A stretch of DNA of 64,000 nucleotides from Sminthopsis crassicaudata (lineage: Eukaryota). The notes under the pieces were generated by a model, which did no database searches, was not told the origin of the DNA, and saw only the letters and a list, made by a program, of their open reading frames with translations. This document shows positions 15,494-54,800 of this stretch, one piece after another. A program made the translations under genes and the position numbers. The DNA lies in assembly GCF_048593235.1 (NCBI RefSeq), contig NC_133617.1, positions 393,766,067-393,830,066 of the forward strand, in the 5' to 3' direction. Every line of letters starts with the position of its first letter. Position 1 is the stretch's first letter.

Positions 15494-18153
15494 GTAAGGT
15501 AACCACTACCTCACAGTTCACTTGGCCAAGGTCAGGGGAGCCATCTGAATGTTTTGTAGTAAGGAGGTGAGACAGGTGACTGCTTCTGAAGAAATTAACT
15601 TTGTGTGGTGGGCTGCCCCAAGATTGCATAGTGAACTTCCCCACTTAGGAAAATTTAATATCTCCATAACCCTGAATAGTTATAAAGTACTCTCACAAAT
15701 ATTCTCTCATTCAGTCTTATGCCATAATAGGAATTGTCTTATATCTGGAAAATTGAGACTTAATAAGACCTGGTGACTTAAGAGACTGGTATTCATAGCT
15801 TAAAGGTCTCTTTGACATTTTCTAGTCTAACCTTTTCATTTTAATTTATTTTTTAACTTAGTTTTTTTTTTTTTTTAAATAAGAAAAATTTATTGTTTCT
15901 TCCTCCATTGGGGAAAAAAGAAGCAAAAAGGGGAGAAAAACTCATGTAAGAAATAGGATAGTTGAGCAAAACAAATTCCCTTATTGGTTATATCCAAAAA
16001 AAATATACTTTATTCTCTACGCTGAATCCATCACCTCTCTGCCAGGCTGTGAGTAATAGCCTTTTATCATCCTTTTGAATCTTGAATTAGACATATTATA
16101 GATTAGATTAGTGTTATAAATGAAGTAGCTAAATTGCATAAGTGGCAGGGCTAGGATTCAAAACCAGATTTTTTTTTGACTGATTATATTATTGTTATTA
16201 ATTGACATTTATACATGGGATCCCAAATGCTATTTTAAGTTACTGAAGCTTACTCTTGTAGCATTTTTAAGACTTATAAAATACTTTTCCCCCATTATTT
16301 TCATTTGATCCCCACAACAATTATGTAAGGGAAGGTTATTTCATATGCTTCTACATCCATTCCACAGATAAGTAATCTGAGGTTCAGAATGACTTGTCCA
16401 GGCTTACAAAAATGAATTGTGTTAAAGAAAGGATCTGAACTAAGGAATTTCTATAGTACCCACCTTGTAAATCTCAGCTGGAAGAGAATTAGCACCAGGT
16501 GCTTTGTCACATGAAAATAATCTAATAGCCTTATTCATCACTTCAGTCCTACCTTCCCCAACATGGCCTCCTATGGCCACACGAGGGAAATGGGGTGGGC
16601 ATATAACTCATCAACCTTGCCACACGCTGACCCCCTTCTCCTTCCAGCTGACATTGTGGTTGTGGTGTATACCCCGAGCTCTGAGCAGGGACAGCCTCAT
16701 CCCCAAATCCCACCTCTCTTTCAGACTTCCCTTTCATTGACAGGTACCACAATGCTTGCAGTTACTTAGGGTCACTTGATACATTTTGCCATTTCTATCC
16801 CAACCACATCTCCTTTTCTGTCCCCTTTTCTGTACTTACACAGCCACCAGTCTAGTTCAGGCCTTCGTTACCTTTAGGGACATTTCCATAGCTTTCTAAG
16901 TTTTCTGCCCTGCCTCAAGTCCCTCCCTTCTCCAATGCCTCCTCCCTTCGGCTGCCAAACTGAAAACTGATTCTCCTAAAAGCACCATCTGACCATAGTA
17001 CTCCATAAATTCTAATGACTTCCTATTGACTCTAGGATCAAATACTATTTCGTTTTTACCACATCCCTTTTAAAGTGTCCATTTTTTTTGCTTAAGTTTT
17101 ATAATGTTATCATTATTATGGTGGTGCATATATCTCATTTATGAATAAACAAAAAAATATTGGGGATGTGTACTAAAAAAATTTTTGCTCATAGGGATAT
17201 ATTTTCAAAAAATTTGGAGCCTGCAAGTCTGGAGAGTGGTAAAGGATAAAATATGAGCAGAGGAAGTGAGAGTAATAAAAGGAAAGCGAAGAGTTCTTTT
17301 GATCTGGGAATGATTGCTTCCCATCCTATTTAGGTGGAGGTTGGAGAAAAGGAGTTTCAAGTACCCATCACTGACCCCAAGCCCCAGAAAACTTGAGCTG
17401 TGAGATGCCTTAAGAAAAGCCCTGGACTTGCCCCAGCTCTGGCTCCACCTGTCAGGTGTGTGCCCTGCCCCTCAAAGACCCTGTAAATGTAAACAATGAT
17501 ACCTTCACTTCCTACTTCCCAACTCTTTGTTTTTAAGTTTTAATTTAACTATTTAAGTTTAACTATTAAGCTATAGAAATGTGATCTTTCATTAAGAGAC
17601 AGGTAAGTGATGTGATGAATAGAGTCCAGAAGTAGAGCCTGGAAGGCCGGGGTTCAAATTCTACTTTGGACATTTACTAGCTGTGTGACTGGCAAAAAAA
17701 AAAAAAAAAAAAATCACTCAGTCTCTTTAAGGTTTCAGTTTGTTTCCTTATCTGTAAAAGAAAAGGGCCCAGACTCATTCGGCTCATATTCTTTTCCAAC
17801 TTGAAATCCTATGAGTCAGACTAAAAGACTTCTCCAATTAGGAAAGATGGGTTAGCATCTCAGTAAAGGGATGAAGGCAGATGACGGCCCCTGTCTGCAA
17901 AAATGTACAGATAAAACCGTAATCTGAAGGAGGAGATTTCAGGACAAATCATAGGCCTTTGTGATTTGGGGCAAGCCACTTTCCTTTTCTGTAAAGAGGT
18001 AAGAGAATGGGTCTAGATTTCCTCCCAGGTCTTCCAGGGCAAAATGCAGTGATCCTAAGGCAGCGAGAGGGAGGATGATTTCAGAAAGGGCCAGTTCCAG
18101 AGGGAGGGCTGGCTCTGGGCCAGAGGTGTTCTTGATGCTGTGTTCTCCCGAAG

Positions 18154-47001: not shown

Positions 47002-50000
47002 GTGAGCTGAGGGGCTGGGCAGCCTGACCCGATGAGCCTTCTCTCTCCCCTTTCCTCCTCTTCTCCTGTCCTGTCTTCCTAATCTCTTCTTTCTCTACGT
47101 GAAACATAGAATCTCCTACATGGAAGAGACCTTAAAGATTATCTAGTCCATACTCCATCTACCCCATCTCCACCTTTATTTTTAATCGGTGAGGAAAATT
47201 GAATTCAGGGAAGACAAATCTTGCCCAAAGTCACTTGTGGCAGAGCTGAGAATGGAATCCAGGGCTCGTGACTCTCCAGTTCCGGGCTGCCTTTGTCTCC
47301 CTCTATCCCCCAATTTTCTATCGACTTCCTTGAAGTGAAGGAGGCTCTGAGGAGAGGGAATTAGCATAGGATAAATTCAGCCAGTTGTGATGACCCCAAG
47401 GGGTCCCCAGAACATACCTTTGCCTGTTTGTTTTGAGGGTATCTCCCTTTAGCCCCGGTGTCCACCCTTCCTCCATTCCTCCTGAGAGCAACATGTGTAG
47501 CTCCTTCCTTGTCTTCACCCCTGCTGTACAGGGCTGTCCTGGGCTGCAGGGAACAACCCCACCATGGGGAACAGTTCTATCCTGGGGATTATCAGAACAG
47601 GGACTACCACCAAAGGGACCAACGCCACTACAGAGACCACCGTGGGGAACAATGCCATCACAGAGAACAATGGCACCCCGGCCAGCAACTCCATTCTGGG
47701 GAACAGTGCTACCACGGGGAACAACAGCACATTGGACTACAAAATCACCTTAGAGACCAAACATGTCTTGGGGAACAACGCTACCATGGGGAACAACAAT
47801 GCGGTTACAGGGATCAGTGCCATCACAGAGACCAAAATCTCGGGGATCAGCAATATCATGGGGAACAGTACCATCGCAGAGATCCATATCTACCTGGGGA
47901 GCAAAACCCGGGTGACCAACAGTATCACGGAGAGCACTACCGTCGCAGGGACCCTGGGGAACAAGAGCTCAGAGAGCAACGCTTCCATGGGGAACAGTGT
48001 CACCACCGGGAAGCGAACCTTGCAGATCAAGAATATCTTGGGGAATATCACCACCGACAGTCAAGCCCCGGGAAACAGCGATATCTTGGGGAGCCGTTCC
48101 ATCACCGAGACTCAAGCCACGGAGAACAACGGTACCTCGGAGAGCAGTTCCACCACCGCCACTCGAGCCACGCAGATCGCTACCTGGGGGACCAACGCCA
48201 TCACCCCAGAGAACGCTTACGGCACCCAGGAGAGCGTCTCCACGGGGACCAGCACACCCTTGGGGAACAGCACCTTCTTGGGGACCAGCGCCATCACAGA
48301 GAACAAAATCCTGGAGAATACCATCACCGAGAACACTGCCGTGGGGAACAGTTCCACCATAGAGAGCAATGCCATTCTGGAGAGCAGACTTACCACAGAG
48401 AACCTCGACACGGGGAGCAAAATTTCCGAGAACGTCACTCTGGGGAACGGCACCACAAGGAGCCGTGTCTCCATGGGGATCAGCGAAGACACCTTGGGGA
48501 ACAATGCTACCATGCATCAACTCTTGGGGAGCAATGCCACCATGGGGAGCGCCAGCACAGGGAGCAAAACCTTGGCGAGGACTATCAGCCCTTTGGAGGA
48601 AGACACACTGGTGAGTTAGAGCTACGGGGCTGGAGGGAGGGGATGCTATGATCCAAGGCTCTTTCTGAGTCATGTTCCTCCCATGTGCTCTCCTGGCTCT
48701 GAGCTCCTCCAGAAAAATAAAGGCAGCATCCACAGCCACCGACCGTACCACGGCTCTGTCTGGTGGTGAGGGTCACACAAGCAATGCCCTCCAAGGGCTT
48801 AGCAAACCCATGTCCTAGGAGGGAGCGGGGTGGGCCCGGCGCCATGATTTCTATGGCAGCAGGATCTTGCAATCAGGAAACTCCCTAACTACATAAAATA
48901 AGTACACAAATCAAACATTTGCTGATGAGAAATCATGACTTTGTGACCTCCATATTCAGCGATGAGACCCTTCATGGGCTGCAACCTTACAGTTTAAGAA
49001 GCTGGGTAATCTAAAGTTTGGTTCGAGTAGAAATTAAGTGATTTGCCTGGCCCGCACGCCTAGGATGGGTTAGAATAGAACATAAATCCAAGTTTTCCTT
49101 TCTGCAAGGCCAGCTCTGGAATACAGAACACTGCCTCTGAAAAAGGCTGTTACCAGTATTTATCATCCTCATCCTCATCAGAGCTGGAGTCCAGGGTATC
49201 TTGTGGCATGGGGAGGAACAGGCATATCAAGGACTAACATGAACTGAACCAGACTGGTTTGGGCTTGGGGATTTGCTTTTAACACATGGAGGAATTTGAC
49301 TCAAAGGAAAGAACTCTAAACTGGGTTCTGGTGGTACCTTTGCCCTTAATTTTCTGTTTGGAGCTAAAGTTTGCCTCCTTTCTCTGGGATTTGTTCTCAC
49401 TTTCTGTCAGATGAAAGTGATAGACACCTGTTTCCCTCTGGGGATTCCTTCAGAAATGACATAACTGTTGGGAATATGGTCTCTAAATTGTACAGCTCTG
49501 TATATAGATATGTATGAAGAATTATTATTCTAAAGACGTGGCCCATGTCTCTTCCTTCTCCTAGATCCCCCCAAAGCGTAACCCAGAATAGACAAGGAAG
49601 TGGCTTAGGAAAGATGGCAGGATGGTGGGGAGTAAAGCCAAGATTCATCTCATCAGATATTCCTTGTTTCTTTTCTCTCTTAGTGCCGGGATTCTGGGAT
49701 AAACGGTGAGTGTCTAATCTCTCAGATGCACATACTTTCTATTTTCCTTGGGACATTCTGAGTCAAGAATCCTCACTATACTTCCCTTTTTCTCCCCATC
49801 AGAAACAGCACTGTGCCGTGGTGAGCTCAGGTAAGGAGCACATTATTTTGCTTTTTGGGGGGCAAGGCAGTCGCAGGGGTGGGAGGTCACATAGCCAGTA
49901 AGTGTTGAGATTTGATTTAGATCCTCCTAGCTCCAGGGCCAGTGCTCTATCCACTGTGCTACTTAGTTTCTGATCAGGCCAGACCAGGATCTCGGGTGGG

Positions 50001-51812
50001 AGGGAGGCAGTTGAAAGCTATCCAGGGATCCAGGAGTCGGGATCCACGGGCCAGAAACCAAGGCTCTGGGGAACAGAGGGTGGGAATCCTGAAAGTTAGA
50101 AACCAGGGGAGCCAGAGCTCCAGGGGGTAAGGATTTAGGGAGAAAGGGGTAAGAGTGCTGTGGAACTGGGGGCTCTTTGGGTTGGGGGAGTTAAAGAGGA
50201 ATTCAGCACCTTCATTGTTGGGACTCCAGAAGTTATCTCTATGGAAGAAATGTGCTTACATTTATATTTTTCCTAAAAAGCAGTCATTCATTCAATCAAC
50301 AAGCATTTTTTTCTTTTTAAATAATAGCTTTTTATTTTCAAAATATATGCAAAGATAGTTTTCAATATCAATCTTGCAAAACCTTGTTTTCCCAATTCTT
50401 TTCCCTCCTTTCCCCCCATCCCCTCCCCTAGACAACAAGCAATCCAATATATGTTAAACACCAACATTTATTCATTGTTCCCCTCTGGACTTCTCAGTTC
50501 ATATCCTATTTTATAGTGACTTCTTCCTACTCCCCTACCTCCCATTTTTGTGTTCTAAAACCTTCAGACTTAGCTTTTTTATCTCTCCTGCTTGTTCTTC
50601 CACTTAAAGGATGGGCAGAGATAGTGGCCCCTATTCAGGTCAGGTGTTTTGAGGCCACAAAATCTCCCCAACTCTGCCCCCAGCACAGCCTCTGCCCTCA
50701 CTTGTATCCCAGGGACCAGGGAAAAACAAAACTAGGCTGGGATATGTCTCCTCCTTCAGACATCTCTCCCCTTCCCCTGGTCTTTGAGAAATCTTCCTTT
50801 TCTGTCCCTTTCCCACTACAAACCACCTTTGGTCCAAACCCCCCCTACACTCTCTTTGCCTGGAAGGAGAAAGTCTTAGTGCCTCAGTACATCCAGCTAT
50901 TCCTACACCTATTTCTAGCAGAACGCCTTCCAAGCAAGCCCAGTTCTCTTAAACCCTTCACTCCTTCCTCTCTCTGACAAACTTATCCTGGTCCTCACTC
51001 TTTCATCTACTCTTAGCATCCTCAGCACACCAGCAGCAGGAGGTCTGCTGCACTTGGCAAAGGACTTCTAACCCAGCCAGCAAAAAAGGCAAAAAAGCAA
51101 AGACTCTTTTGTAAAGCCTTTGAATGAATGAGTGTGTGTGTGAGTGAGTGATTGAGTGAGTGGAAAAGCATTAAGTAATTACTATGTACAAAGCCCTGTG
51201 CTAAGCTCTGGGTATACAAATAGAAAAGTAAGACTATTCTTGGTCTCAAATAGGGAGGAGGGTTTGGCTCTGAGTTAAATGGAAAGGTTTCATAGTTATT
51301 AAGATGTAATGGAAGAACTTTGCCATTTTTCAGGTATATAGACACAAAACTAAATCTCATAGTCTTTTGCTGTTAACTGTCCCGTGTTTCCTGCTGGGAA
51401 GTCCAGGGATAGCCATAAAGGACATTGAAAGGAGAGGAAATAATAGGTTCCTAATAAGAAAGTAGTGTTTCCTGAGTTCTAAGCATGCTCTGTGGCTTCT
51501 CAAAGGAAGAAGGGAGCAGGTAGGAGAGTATGGATCATATTAAGTTATATACTACACCTATCTACTCTCTCAACAGGGAACCCCGGAAAGGTAAGGAAAG
51601 TAGGGGAAGCAGTATCCTTCAGTCCCTGAAGCCCTGAGTCTCCCAGTGAGTCCCAGGAGATCTTGATTTCCAGTGAAAAGTGTCTGCATTCATTCCAGAC
51701 TTTTAATGATAGTGTTTAGCTTATGGAGAGGGACCAATGGTCAAGTAGAGGCTAGATGAGATGACCATAGAGTGATTCAGTGATTCTCATTCTCTCTGTC
51801 TCTCTGTCTCTC

Positions 51813-51887
<75 letters not shown>

Positions 51888-54800
51888 GTATCTCAGCTCT
51901 GGAGAAAGTGCCGAAAACATCAGCCTAAGGGATTTTATCTGCCAAAAGGTGAGTAGGAGGTCCTGTTGGACACCGATTCCCAGCCTTTCTCTTCTGCCAT
52001 GTCCTCTCTTCTGGCTGCTTGGAGACTAGAAATCTCATCTCCAAAGTCCTATTTCTGCTCTCCAAAGGCCCTAGCTCCCTATACCTCTGACCTTGAAAAT
52101 CCCACACAGTCTCCTGGCTTTGGGGGAATGTGTTTAGATGGAGCCCGTTTCCTTTTCCATTTGTCCCAATGGTTCTGGGAATTCTCTCCTAGTTTCTTGC
52201 TTTAATTTCTCCTCAAAAGCCCTGGGATGAGGTGGCCTTGAGCAAATTATAAACTTTCTGGGCCTCCATTTCTTTATCTCTAAGATTCATGGGTTGGACT
52301 AAGTAATTAGATGATGAAGTGGATAGAGCACTGATAGAGCTCTGGGTCTGGAGTCAGGAAGACTTGAATTCCAACCCAGCCTCAAATACTCATTAGCAGT
52401 GCCACCTTGCACAAACCATTTTGTTTCTATTTGCCTCAGTTTTTTTCAGCTGTAAAATGGGGATAATAGTAGTACTGATTGCCCAGAGTTGTTGTGAGGA
52501 CTTAATGAGAGTATTTGTAAAGCATTTAGGCTAGTGCCTGGCACATAATAGGTGCTATATAAATCCTGGCTGCTATTATTATTTTTCTATGCATATAATT
52601 ATTATTTTATTATATGTATAATATTATTTGTGAATAGTAATATTATTATTATTCTATGAAACAGCTTTCTGGAGAGAAAACACACAGGCTCTGCACTTAG
52701 CTCTGCAATCTCCTATCTGTGATTTTAGCTACAGTTTCTTCATCTGTAAGATGAAGGGGTTAATCTCAGTGGTCTCTAACAATACTCTCAAGTCTGGATC
52801 TTTAACTTTATGGTCTCTAAGGTGTTTTATTTTAAAAAATGATTCTCTTATTTTTAAAATACACATTTCTTTATGAATCAGATATTTTACTTTTCTAGAA
52901 ATCTTTTGAATTAGGAAGTTATGAGAAGTAGAGGACTGTGGGGCAGGGGTCAGAACATCAAGGGTAGGGGGTCCTGTGGAGGAAGAGAAGAGCCTTGCAG
53001 GGCATAGGGAAGGTGGCAAAGTCTTGAAAACAAGCTTTGACAAGTGGTTTTGTGAAGCAGCAAACCAGGGGATGGGTATATGGGAGGGTTGTGGGTAGAA
53101 GTGAAGGGGGGGTTAGTTCTGTAGCCTGCTTGAAATTGCCCTCTGGATTCTGATTCCCAGAGAGCCCAAGGGTCACCGCTGAACAGAGAAGAACTAGAAG
53201 TGAGACTGAGCAGGGCCAAGTGTAAGGATCCAGGGATAATACAGACCCTGGCCCTAATCTTTAGCTATGCCAACCTCAAAGAACTCCAAGACATTCTTGT
53301 CCAGGTACCTGTGGGAGACCTCCTGAGGGACGGGGTGGGAGACGGAAGGATGGGCTCCGGGCAGGGGACCGGGCAATGTCTGGCGTTTCACAAATCCTAG
53401 TGACCCAGGATTTTTAACACATCTTCTCTAGCTCTCAGGCTGAGTGATGTGGTGAGGGGAGGGAGCTGCACCCAGGAAATGGCCTGGCATTTAGACTGTC
53501 TGCTACCTTTCCTTGGGTCTCTTGCCTCTGTTTTCCTTTGGAAGTCCCTGGCTGGGGGGGGGAGGCCCTGGGCTGCCCACAGACAAGTGGATAACATGTT
53601 TTGGGGAAAATACTTGTGTTTGTTTCAGCTGAATGGCTCTCTCTGCCACGCTGCCACTAGGAAAGCTTTGTGGACCCTTATGCTACAGGGACGACTGGAT
53701 TTTAAGGATACCCCATCCCTGCGCTGGTGGTTCCAGGATTTCCTCCAGCCCTTTCTGACATCACTGTCCAGAGATGAACGATGCTTCCCCCTCAATACCC
53801 TGAACTGCAAACAATACCAGGCTTTGTAGGTTTGCTAGACACTGGATTCTTTTTCCATCTTCCCAGAACCCAGATGGGGAGGCTAATCAAAATCAACAAC
53901 TTTATTTCCCCCAACATAGAAGGTGTTTGGGCTTTATTTTCTCAAAATACAGAACCGATCGTTCTGGGTTGTGGCTGGGAGGTGGGAGGGAGAAATAGAG
54001 AAGGGGAGATGGCTCTGTACTTAAGGAAGCCCTTCGTCTATGGCCCTTGGTGCCCCATAGTTCTTTGCTCCTTACCCTTAGGGAGCCCCCTGGGAGTATG
54101 AGGGAAGATAGTATTCTTGTCCTCGGGGAGCCTTGGCCTGGGCAGGTTGAAATATAACCCCCATCCTCGGAGAGTTAAATCTCAGTAGAAGACCCTTCTC
54201 CCATCCTTGGGAAATATTTGGTCTGAGATCTGCATTCTCTACCCCTTCCCCTACCAGGAATCTTTCATTTTAAGGGAAAGTATGGTCCCTGCTCATTCAA
54301 AAGGCCACATGGCTCCCATAAGTCTGAAGGAGAACCACATCCCTGTTTTTGTTACTGAAGGAGATAACATCTCCCCCTCCTGGGGGAGCCTGCAGTGTGA
54401 GAGCAAGACATGATCCTCCATCAGGGAGCCTCCAGTTGTAGGTAGAGATATGGCCTCTGCCCTCAGAGAGCCCCTTCCAGAGGGGACTTGTTCTTGGGGT
54501 GCTCCCAAGCTGCCCCTTATCCTTAGGGAGCCCCCTGAGGGAGCCCTTAGCATGAGAGACAGACATCATTTTTGCCCTTTCTCCTTTCTGATGGGGAGAT
54601 GTAGCTCTTGCTTCTAAGGAGCCCCCAAACTGAGGGAGGAGACAGAGTCCTCATGTCTGAAGGGGAGATAATGGCCTCCACTCCCAGGGAACTTGCCTGA
54701 GGAAGAGAGAAATGGCTCTGGCCCTCAGGGAACCCCCTTCCTAAGAGAAAAATAAATCAAATCTGTCTAAACACTCACAGTGAGGCCCGGTATCACCAGA

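What the first reader, a model, noticed from the sequence alone, without database searches (positions are those of the whole stretch)
47501..48651. A 1.1-kb dual-coding exon: one sequence, two unrelated secreted protein domains, with signs of selection on the 'hidden' His/Gln-rich frame
Seen: the exon is stop-free in frame A (N/T/S/G-rich) and in frame B (xHHREQ/xxHGEQ hexapeptides; ~57 His, ~34 [GR][ED]Q). By hand count over 349 frame-A codons, 48 end in T and 116 start with AA/AG/GA. Independence would predict ~16 frame-B stops, yet none occur (the repeat origin weakens this test). Repeat variation is synonymous in B but not in A. The Arg of HHR is AGA, CGG, CGA or CGC (frame A TE/TG/TE/TA), Gly varies GGG/GGA/GGC/GGT, and His and Glu vary CAC/CAT and GAA/GAG (frame A T/I and N/S swaps). 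Seven frame-B CGA codons are one CpG deamination from TGA, a change silent in frame A, and none has mutated. Frame A is the one supported by the strong acceptor, the signal peptide and 17 sequons. Inference: an overprinted exon yields either a glycosylated stalk or a His/Cys/Gln-rich domain that could bind metal or be cross-linked. I do not recognise either domain as described.
Basis: partly seen in the sequence, partly recalled or inferred. Interest (0 to 1): 0.92.

Follow-up and report, generated by a model that had tools for sequence, protein, structure and literature searches.

The report
Exon whose hidden frame is conserved
A 1.1-kb exon of a marsupial mesothelin-like gene is open in two reading frames. 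Across about 80 million years it has evolved as if the unannotated histidine-rich frame, not the annotated "mucin-like" one, makes the protein that matters.

Summary
RNA contigs define an exon at 47532-48610 (1079 nt) in the fat-tailed dunnart, Sminthopsis crassicaudata. It has no stop codon in frame A (N/T/S-rich, the NCBI annotation) or in frame B (His/Arg/Gln/Glu/Gly-rich).

I fetched the orthologous exon from tammar, bilby and opossum. Both frames are open in all four species.

The substitution pattern follows frame B:
- Frame-A second positions (frame-B third positions) change at the intron rate. Frame-A third positions change about three times more slowly.
- Maximum-likelihood omega is 0.24-0.34 for B (2dlnL 32-62) and 1.5-1.7 for A.
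- Of 46 one-step dunnart/Antechinus amino-acid changes in A, 37 are silent in B.
- Given protein B, frame A is open almost for free. Given protein A, 11-16 stops are expected in B.

A conserved upstream first exon (ATG at 40295, phase 2) reads frame B when spliced straight to this exon. An NCBI tammar isoform shows that junction. The signal-peptide exon (46953-47001, phase 1) sets frame A.

No link between B and the signal peptide is supported, so a secreted B product is not supported. Whether A has any function is open.

The scan noted this same stretch before, as s1-189968.

The parts
40295..40341 (+). Coding part of alternative first exon 1b. ATG at 40295, peptide MGSGRGPGVFALGNQ+G, donor in phase 2. 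Spliced directly to 47532 it reads frame B.
   Evidence: It is the start of NCBI isoform X1, P0014. The surrounding block has 94% mean column identity among dunnart, tammar and opossum, with the ATG and the donor conserved. Tammar isoform P0008 joins this exon directly to frame B. The ORF arithmetic is checked. Run X7 holds half of the sampled words of 40255-40341.
41836..41870 (+). 35-nt exon 2b. It shifts the exon-1b ATG into frame A (isoform X1). Its last two bases (AT) plus the G at 47532 create a junction ATG in frame B.
   Evidence: It is not conserved: tammar has AC in place of AT and lacks the acceptor region, and opossum differs too. The X5 and X7 contigs match from 47531, so their upstream exon ends in G, not T.
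46953..47001 (+). Signal-peptide exon (MGLPTQFLALLPGLCL+G), donor in phase 1. It sets frame A.
   Evidence: tblastn of P0001, the sequence itself, and conservation with the same phase in four species. Depth is 0 in spliced runs X5 and X7.
47532..48610 (+). The 1079-nt repeat exon. Frame A codons start at 47534 and frame B codons at 47533.
   Evidence: RNA contigs in X5 (word depth 1320) and X7 start at the acceptor and splice out at 48610. Both frames are open. The orthologous exon has the same boundaries in tammar, bilby and opossum.
49565..49705 (+). 141-nt exon used in dunnart RNA. Frame B stops at TAA 49579-49581 (tail DPPKA). Frame A stops at TAG 49589-49591 (tail IPPKRNPE).
   Evidence: Joint 48610|49565 in X5 and X7, translation. 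The acceptor AG is present only in dunnart; the other three species have GG.
49684..49705 (+). Conserved 22-nt microexon used in the NCBI models. It keeps frame A in frame with the mesothelin-like part.
   Evidence: tblastn of P0001. The microexon, its pyrimidine tract and its donor are conserved in four species. Arithmetic.
49803..49830 (+). 28-nt exon that accepts phase 1. Frame B read through the microexon ends here at a TGA conserved in four species.
   Evidence: Joint 49705|49803 in X5 and X7, alignment, 389-aa ORF.
51897..51948 (+). Next exon (52 nt) of the same transcript. It begins the mesothelin-like coding part.
   Evidence: The loose end of the X5 contig after 49830 matches this sequence. 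tblastn of P0001.

Best explanation
The exon is a protein-coding exon in frame B.

Transcripts that start at the conserved upstream first exon 1b (ATG 40295, phase 2) and splice straight to 47532 encode a protein of about 380-390 residues. It is extremely hydrophilic and predicted to be disordered. It is built of hexapeptide repeats such as HGEQ[CFY]H and HHR[ED]Q, with 13-16% His and 10-14% each of Arg, Gln, Glu and Gly. It has no signal peptide, so it is probably intracellular. It ends a few codons after the exon: in the dunnart-specific 141-nt exon in dunnart, and at a conserved TGA in the 28-nt exon in the other species.

This protein has been under purifying selection since before the opossum/Australian marsupial split.

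Frame A is the reading NCBI calls 'mucin-22-like' or 'uncharacterized'. It is open mainly because protein B rarely creates stops in it. It carries no detectable constraint on its own amino-acid sequence. If A is translated from transcripts that start at the signal-peptide exon, it behaves as an unconstrained spacer in front of the mesothelin-like domain.

Shown: the exon and its splicing, both open frames in four species, the substitution asymmetry, and the phases of the two first exons.

Inferred: that B is translated from exon 1b in dunnart, that it is intracellular, and any biochemical role such as metal binding or condensate formation.
For: Both frames are open in four species, and all indels are multiples of 3.

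Raw pairwise differences by codon position: A2 (=B3) 0.25-0.38, A1 (=B2) 0.15-0.25, A3 (=B1) 0.11-0.12. Flanking introns differ by 0.18-0.39. A frame-blind nucleotide alignment gives the same result, as does every 40-codon window and every codon of the repeat unit.

GY94 maximum likelihood: omega B 0.34, 0.27 and 0.24, with 2dlnL 31.6, 53.7 and 61.9 against omega=1. Omega A is 1.5-1.66.

Rates by substitution class in two phylogenetically independent pairs:
- silent in both frames: 0.67
- non-synonymous in A, silent in B: 0.38
- silent in A, non-synonymous in B: 0.13
- non-synonymous in both: 0.19
The second class against the third gives p=4e-20.

Dunnart against Antechinus: 42 of 46 one-step changes are at A2, and 37 of 46 are silent in B.

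Shuffles: keeping protein A gives 11-16 frame-B stops; keeping protein B gives 0.1-2.7 frame-A stops. Simulation.

CpG-containing CGA codons of frame B are conserved.

The ATG and phase-2 donor of exon 1b are conserved. NCBI tammar isoform XP_072457207 starts MGSGRGPGVFALGSQG followed directly by AVLGCRDPPHHGEQ, which is frame B.

Dunnart RNA: the abundant contig lacks the signal-peptide exon. Intronic reads lie upstream of that exon. The upstream exon ends in G. X7 carries 58 upstream nt and holds half the sampled words of exon 1b.
Against: No peptide or ribosome-profiling evidence exists for either frame.

I could not read the 5' junction of the dunnart transcripts. Run X5, which has the very abundant transcript, is not listed as holding the exon-1b words.

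The frame-B stop is followed by several exon junctions. By the usual rule that should trigger nonsense-mediated decay, yet the RNA is abundant.

Frame B has no relative outside this locus, no Pfam family and no predicted fold.

All opossum NCBI isoforms and the dunnart ones are modelled in frame A.

Under selection on B alone, the simulation leaves frame A open in all four species in at most 0.5% of runs. This hints that A may also be kept open. The same simulation overpredicts frame-C stops, so the hint is soft.
Confidence: 0.58

Rival explanations
1. True dual coding, with the frame chosen by the promoter. Exon 1b transcripts make the His-rich protein in frame B. Signal-peptide-exon transcripts make a secreted mesothelin-like protein whose N-terminal N/T/S-rich stalk is the same DNA in frame A. 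The 22-nt microexon restores the frame. Both products are functional.
For: Two conserved first exons have different phases. The microexon is conserved, and repeat exon plus microexon is a multiple of 3 in all four species. NCBI tammar isoforms use both frames. Frame A is open in four species, although forward simulation under selection on B alone predicts 1.5-2 stops per lineage.
Against: Frame A has omega 1.5-1.7. Changes that alter both frames are more frequent than changes that alter only B. Sequons are near the composition expectation and not positionally conserved. Keeping protein B leaves frame A open in 2-90% of shuffles. The signal-peptide exon has zero depth in the two spliced dunnart runs. 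The signal-peptide exon can also reach the mesothelin-like frame by skipping the whole cassette.
Confidence: 0.3
2. The constraint acts on nucleic acid, not protein. A period-3 RNA or DNA signal in a long exon, such as splicing enhancers, avoidance of cryptic splice sites, or G-runs, mimics selection on frame B.
For: The GGGGAA core is highly conserved. Frame-B Gly codons are 92% GGR. GGT-GA would resemble a splice donor, and tammar does use such a site as a cryptic donor in the NCBI models. Frame C also has fewer stops than simulated.
Against: The conservation is 3-periodic at every codon of the unit, not only in the core. A3 sites whose change is silent in both frames evolve about five times faster than A3 sites whose change alters B. 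Stops are avoided and Arg CGN codons are kept specifically in frame B.
Confidence: 0.06
3. Only frame A codes. Frame B is open by chance, because the exon arose from a stop-free 18-nt repeat and is T-poor.
For: There is a repeat structure, T is 14%, and stops are scarce in five of six frames. The NCBI annotation uses A.
Against: The species differ by 20-24% yet B is open in all four. Selection on A only gives 7.6-9 frame-B stops per lineage, and B was open in at most about 1 in 1000 simulated lineages and never in all four at once. Sites that are synonymous in A evolve at about a third of the intron rate. Omega B is far below 1.
Confidence: 0.03

Closest known systems
CDKN2A (p16INK4a / p14ARF): alternative first exons reading a shared exon in two frames
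   Same: Two first exons with their own start codons and different phases are spliced to one shared exon. That exon is therefore read in two frames that give unrelated sequences.
   Different: Here the shared exon is a 1.1-kb degenerate tandem repeat, and only one frame (B) shows purifying selection. Translation of either product is unproven. Frame A needs an extra 22-nt microexon to stay in frame with the rest of the gene.
GNAS XLalphas / ALEX and other mammalian overlapping ORFs
   Same: There is a long overlap of two open frames in a mammalian exon. The alternative frame gives a low-complexity, disordered protein, and apparent omega is above 1 in one frame because the other is constrained.
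   Different: ALEX and XLalphas come from one mRNA. Here the frame is set by which first exon is spliced on.
Histidine-rich, disordered repeat proteins such as filaggrin and hornerin (S100-fused type)
   Same: The composition is similar: rich in His, Arg, Gln, Glu and Gly, highly hydrophilic, repetitive, predicted disordered, and very abundant RNA in some sample. This is a resemblance in how it may work only.
   Different: There is no S100 or EF-hand domain and no Pfam hit. Serine is scarce. The gene lies in a mesothelin-like locus. No homology was detected.
Mucin-like stalks (the NCBI name 'mucin-22-like')
   Same: Frame A is 44% Thr+Ser+Asn, repetitive, follows a signal peptide in the models and precedes an extracellular-type domain.
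   Different: Proline is scarce. There is no constraint on the amino-acid sequence, and sequons are not conserved. The composition follows mechanically from frame-B codons (CAN, GAN, GGN).

Membership tests
Dual-coding exon set by alternative first exons (CDKN2A type) | One exon is open in two frames over its whole length | tested here: met
   0 stops in A and B in dunnart, tammar, bilby and opossum.
Dual-coding exon set by alternative first exons (CDKN2A type) | Two first exons with start codons in different phases | tested here: met
   Exon 1b has its ATG at 40295 and a phase-2 donor. The signal-peptide exon has its ATG at 46953 and a phase-1 donor. Both are conserved. NCBI tammar isoforms show both junctions.
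Dual-coding exon set by alternative first exons (CDKN2A type) | Purifying selection on both encoded proteins | tested here: not met
   Omega B is 0.24-0.34. Omega A is 1.5-1.66. The rate of changes altering both frames exceeds the rate of changes altering only B.
Dual-coding exon set by alternative first exons (CDKN2A type) | Both products are translated | not testable with these tools
   No proteomic or ribosome-profiling data could be reached.
Mucin / PTS-domain protein (annotated name of frame A) | A Ser/Thr/Pro-rich repeat domain kept by selection behind a signal peptide | tested here: inconclusive
   Frame A is S/T/N-rich and lies behind a signal peptide in the models. It is Pro-poor, has omega above 1, and its sequons are near chance and not conserved.
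Mesothelin family (PF06060) | The Mesothelin domain | tested here: met
   Tammar isoform P0008 matches PF06060 at 1.5e-86 over residues 922-1493. This applies to the gene, not to the repeat exon, which lies outside the domain.
Hexapeptide-repeat left-handed beta-helix (PF00132 / PF25084) | A Pfam score above the cutoff and a beta-helix fold for frame A | tested here: not met
   13.5 and 15.5 bits against cutoffs of 27 and 54. The AlphaFold2 model has mean pLDDT 26.8 and no secondary structure.
S100-fused-type His-rich proteins (filaggrin-like) | An N-terminal S100 EF-hand domain | tested here: not met
   No Pfam family matches frame B. The N-terminus from exon 1b is 16 residues with no domain.

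The most novel reading that the evidence does not exclude
A genuine two-proteins-from-one-exon switch that has lasted about 80 million years in marsupials. The upstream promoter (exon 1b) yields an abundant intracellular His/Arg/Gln-rich disordered protein from frame B. The signal-peptide promoter yields a secreted mesothelin-like protein whose glycosylated N-terminal stalk is the same DNA in frame A. Microexon use is coupled to frame choice: 1b + exon + skipped microexon, and signal exon + exon + microexon, are both in frame with the mesothelin-like part.
Probability: 0.3. Interest if true: 0.85.

Novelty: new member of a known kind. Interest (0 to 1): 0.72.

Why it matters
If frame B is translated, marsupials carry a conserved protein that no database names. 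Its RNA is very abundant in at least one sample: by my own estimate from the contig's length and depth, it takes about 2-3% of run X5's bases. In dunnart, Antechinus, bilby and opossum the NCBI models translate the exon in the frame that shows no constraint.

This is a clean test case for annotation pipelines. They choose the frame that gives the longest ORF to the downstream domain, and here codon-position divergence points to the other frame.

It would also add a long, old example to the short list of mammalian exons read in two frames through alternative first exons. The predictions are directly testable: junction counts, frame-specific peptides and ribosome-profiling periodicity.

Tried and rejected
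- **Homology search with frame B** (197-628 aa candidates): nothing found. Pfam and PDB sequence searches: nothing for B.
- **ESM Atlas feature search:** low recognition, only repetitive bacterial clusters. Uninformative.
- **AlphaFold2 on both frames with the ortholog alignments:** both disordered, so no fold search was worthwhile.
- **Frame A as a hexapeptide beta-helix:** rejected.
- **Antisense reading frames:** the only one whose codon positions would fit the conservation order has 26-31 stops.
- **Rfam on the conserved exon-1b block:** no family.
- **Antechinus DNA:** could not be fetched, because neither isoform is on record as a gene product. Only its frame-A protein was used.
- **Brushtail possum locus L002:** it covers only the 3' part of the gene and has no repeat exon in range.
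no RNA depth in X5 or X7, and the AG is absent in opossum.
- **Intronic poly(A) read-through after 48610:** no depth beyond the donor in X5 or X7.
- **Exon 2b junction ATG as the conserved start of B:** rejected, because exon 2b is not conserved and the X5 and X7 upstream exon ends in G.
- **Tammar B-to-A switch inside the exon:** it rests on a tammar-only GGTGAGC donor.
- **Literature:** nothing on this locus.
Full report
**What is there**

RNA contigs from two spliced runs define the exon as 47532-48610 (1079 nt). A 1466-nt contig in X5, at word depth 1320, starts at the acceptor. It joins 48610 to 49565, runs through a 141-nt exon to 49705, then a 28-nt exon (49803-49830), and then sequence that I located at 51897. 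X7 shows the same joints.

That contig times its depth is about 2-3% of the bases of the 74-million-letter run X5. This is my arithmetic.

The bin depths fit exon-only coverage exactly.

**Checking the observation**

Frame A (codons from 47534) and frame B (codons from 47533) have no stops. Frame C has 3. The minus-strand frames have 2, 6 and 30.

The sequence is T-poor (14%) and made of degenerate 18- and 15-nt units.

- 49 frame-A codons end in T and 118 start with AA/AG/GA, so 16.1 frame-B stops are expected.
- His is 16%, [GR][ED]Q occurs 34 times, and there are 17 sequons.
- Frame B has seven CGA codons.

Permuting synonymous codons of protein A gives a mean of 14 frame-B stops, and never fewer than 5 in 5000 shuffles.

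**Identity of the gene**

Frame A is 100% identical to NCBI XP_074135831, 'uncharacterized protein LOC141549801 isoform X2' of Sminthopsis crassicaudata. It is 85% identical to 'mucin-22-like' of Antechinus flavipes.

Frame B found nothing among candidates of 197-628 aa.

The NCBI model runs: signal-peptide exon 46953-47001 (MGLPTQFLALLPGLCL+G, phase 1), then the repeat exon in frame A, then a 22-nt microexon (49684-49705), then the 28-nt exon, then mesothelin-like exons. Long isoforms in other marsupials carry PF06060 Mesothelin.

**Orthologues**

I fetched the loci of tammar (L001), bilby (L003) and opossum (L004). The exon has the same splice boundaries in all three.
- Its lengths are 1067, 1088 and 1124 nt. 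All, like 1079, leave remainder 2 on division by 3.
- All indels are multiples of 3.
- Frames A and B are stop-free in all four species. Frame C has 3, 2, 2 and 0 stops.

**Which frame is constrained**

Raw pairwise differences by codon position:

| Position | Difference |
|---|---|
| A2 (= third position of B) | 0.25-0.38 |
| A1 (= second position of B) | 0.15-0.25 |
| A3 (= first position of B) | 0.11-0.12 |
| Flanking introns | 0.18-0.39 |

So the positions that are 'synonymous' in the annotated frame evolve at about a third of the neutral rate. The positions that always change the frame-A protein evolve neutrally.

The same pattern appears in a frame-blind nucleotide alignment, in every 40-codon window and at every codon of the repeat unit.

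Estimates of omega:
- Nei-Gojobori: 1.4-2.05 for A, 0.16-0.31 for B.
- My GY94 maximum-likelihood fit: omega B 0.34, 0.27 and 0.24, with 2dlnL 31.6, 53.7 and 61.9 against omega=1. Omega A is 1.5-1.66. Omega C is 0.9-1.5.

I sorted single differences by their effect in both frames, in two phylogenetically independent pairs (dunnart-bilby and tammar-opossum) with kappa=3:

| Effect | Rate |
|---|---|
| Silent in both frames | 0.67 |
| Non-synonymous in A, silent in B | 0.38 |
| Silent in A, non-synonymous in B | 0.13 |
| Non-synonymous in both | 0.19 |

The second class against the third gives an odds ratio of 4.2 and p=4e-20. Sites silent in both frames are much faster than sites silent in A only (p=7e-6). 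This argues against a generic constraint on frame-A third positions such as codon bias.

A third, recent lineage agrees. Of 51 dunnart/Antechinus differences in protein A, 46 are one-step changes. 42 of those lie at A2, and 37 are silent in B.

Aligned amino-acid identity is 66-74% in B against 49-61% in A, even though the alignment was built on A.

CpG-containing CGA codons of frame B are mostly conserved across the four species.

**Asymmetry of the two open frames**

- Keeping protein A, B is expected to carry 11-16 stops in each species.
- Keeping protein B, A is expected to carry only 0.1-2.7. The chance of zero stops is 0.026, 0.895, 0.016 and 0.237 in the four species.
- Forward simulation on a star tree (0.18 neutral substitutions per site per branch) with selection on A only gives 7.6-9 frame-B stops per lineage.
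- With selection on B only it gives 1.5-2.0 frame-A stops per lineage, and all four species stay open in at most 0.5% of runs.

That last figure hints that A may also be kept open. But the same simulation overpredicts frame-C stops (5.5-8 against 0-3 observed), so I treat it as soft.

Sequons in A (15-22) are close to the composition expectation (13-15). Only one sequon position is shared by all four species.

**How frame B can be read**

Frame B has no ATG inside the exon.

NCBI isoform X1 of dunnart (P0014) starts at an upstream first exon, 1b. Its ATG is at 40295, it encodes MGSGRGPGVFALGNQ+G, and its donor lies after 40341 in phase 2.

The block around it has 94% mean column identity among dunnart, tammar and opossum. 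The ATG and the donor are included.

Spliced directly to 47532, exon 1b reads frame B. The ORF is 380 aa with the 141-nt exon and 389 aa with the microexon. If the microexon is skipped it runs in frame into the mesothelin-like part.

NCBI's tammar isoform X6 (XP_072457207, P0008) has this junction: MGSGRGPGVFALGSQG followed directly by AVLGCRDPPHHGEQ. Four further tammar isoforms also enter the exon in frame B. Those models then return to frame A through an internal intron whose GGTGAGC donor exists only in tammar. I regard that switch as not conserved.

In dunnart, a 35-nt exon 2b (41836-41870) shifts the 1b ATG into frame A. It also creates a junction ATG for frame B. It is not conserved in tammar or opossum.

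**Dunnart RNA hints (inference, not a direct reading)**

- In X5 and X7 the signal-peptide exon has zero depth, while low-depth intronic contigs lie upstream of it at 45.1 and 46.3 kb. Transcription therefore starts further upstream.
- Both contigs match from 47531. Their upstream exon therefore ends in G, as exon 1b and the signal-peptide exon do, and not in T as exon 2b does.
- The X7 contig has 58 nt upstream of the exon. X7 also holds half of the sampled words of 40255-40341. That is what a transcript starting near 40284 would give.
- X5 is not listed as holding those words. That is a gap in the argument.

**The 3' side**

The acceptor AG of the 141-nt exon is present only in dunnart; the other three species have GG. 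The 22-nt microexon, its pyrimidine tract and its donor are conserved.

In dunnart's abundant transcript every frame stops early in the 141-nt exon: B after DPPKA and A after IPPKRNPE. That transcript cannot encode the mesothelin-like part.

In the other species, frame B read through the microexon ends at a TGA in the 28-nt exon that is conserved in all four.

A frame-B stop followed by several exon junctions should invite nonsense-mediated decay. The RNA is abundant all the same. This is unexplained.

**Nature of protein B**

- Composition: 13-16% His and 10-14% each of Arg, Gln, Glu and Gly. Tyr is 5-6%. There are 7-14 Cys, almost no Lys, and no Met.
- GRAVY is about -2 and pI is 6.6-6.9.
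- AlphaFold2 gives mean pLDDT 39, which means disordered.
- No Pfam family, PDB sequence or other relative was found.

There is no signal peptide on the exon-1b route, so I infer an intracellular, disordered repeat protein. Metal binding through the recurring C-H-H and H-H motifs, or condensate formation as in filaggrin-like proteins, is speculation from composition alone.

**Comparison with what is known**

The architecture is that of CDKN2A: alternative first exons of different phase reading one shared exon in two frames. GNAS XLalphas/ALEX is the closest case of a long overlap that gives a disordered protein. Membership fails on one defining feature, because only one of the two frames shows purifying selection here.

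I found no paper on this locus. NCBI already lists isoforms in both frames for tammar, but as automatic models only.

**Caveats**

- Four genomes plus one protein is a small sample.
- The omega estimates treat overlapping frames separately.
- The runs are coded, so the tissue is unknown.
- Runs X1-X4 cover introns evenly and behave like DNA.
- Translation of either frame is untested.

Noticed in passing
window 40230-40400: A block of about 170 nt around exon 1b has 94% mean column identity among dunnart, tammar and opossum. It includes about 60 nt of the intron after the donor, so it is far more conserved than nearby introns. Its 5' edge abuts a SINE tail. No Rfam family matches. It could be a promoter or enhancer, or something else.
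   Followed up: partly
window 49563-49564: A dunnart-only AG (GG in tammar, bilby and opossum) creates the acceptor of the 141-nt exon. Using it puts stops in all three frames, so the abundant dunnart transcript cannot reach the mesothelin-like coding part.
   Followed up: yes
L001 about 16464-16719 (tammar): A tammar-only GGTGAGC inside the repeat exon serves as the donor of a 256-nt internal intron in NCBI isoforms X3-X6. It switches the reading from frame B to frame A.
   Followed up: partly
L004 12417-13540 (opossum): All three forward frames of the 1124-nt opossum exon are stop-free. Frame C has fewer stops in every species than either selection model predicts.
   Followed up: partly
L001 and L004, just upstream of exon 1b: Tammar and opossum have an extra ATG (CCATGATTCT) where dunnart has CCACAATTCT. 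UniProt F6QGD8 of opossum starts there, in another frame of exon 1b.
   Followed up: no
window 53827 region: The dunnart and Antechinus NCBI isoforms end at ...NCKQYQAL, where the other species continue ...QYQAIVQGL. The dasyurid models therefore seem to run into an intron and stop, giving proteins of about 500 aa instead of about 1650.
   Followed up: no
window 41275-41554, 39170-39700, 51770-51895: Three features: an N run of 280 bases (an assembly gap or masked stretch, left as is), a purine-rich low-complexity stretch, and a (CT)n microsatellite directly upstream of the 52-nt exon.
   Followed up: no
runs X1-X4 on window 45001-51000: These runs are labelled 'RNA?' but cover introns and exons evenly at depth 9-19 and show no splice joints. 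They behave like DNA or unspliced RNA and say nothing about splicing.
   Followed up: no
P0004 (Serrasalmus rhombeus, 4003 aa): A fish protein matches the short region 485-523 of the dunnart protein in 11 separate stretches. It looks like a highly repeated mesothelin-like module.
   Followed up: no
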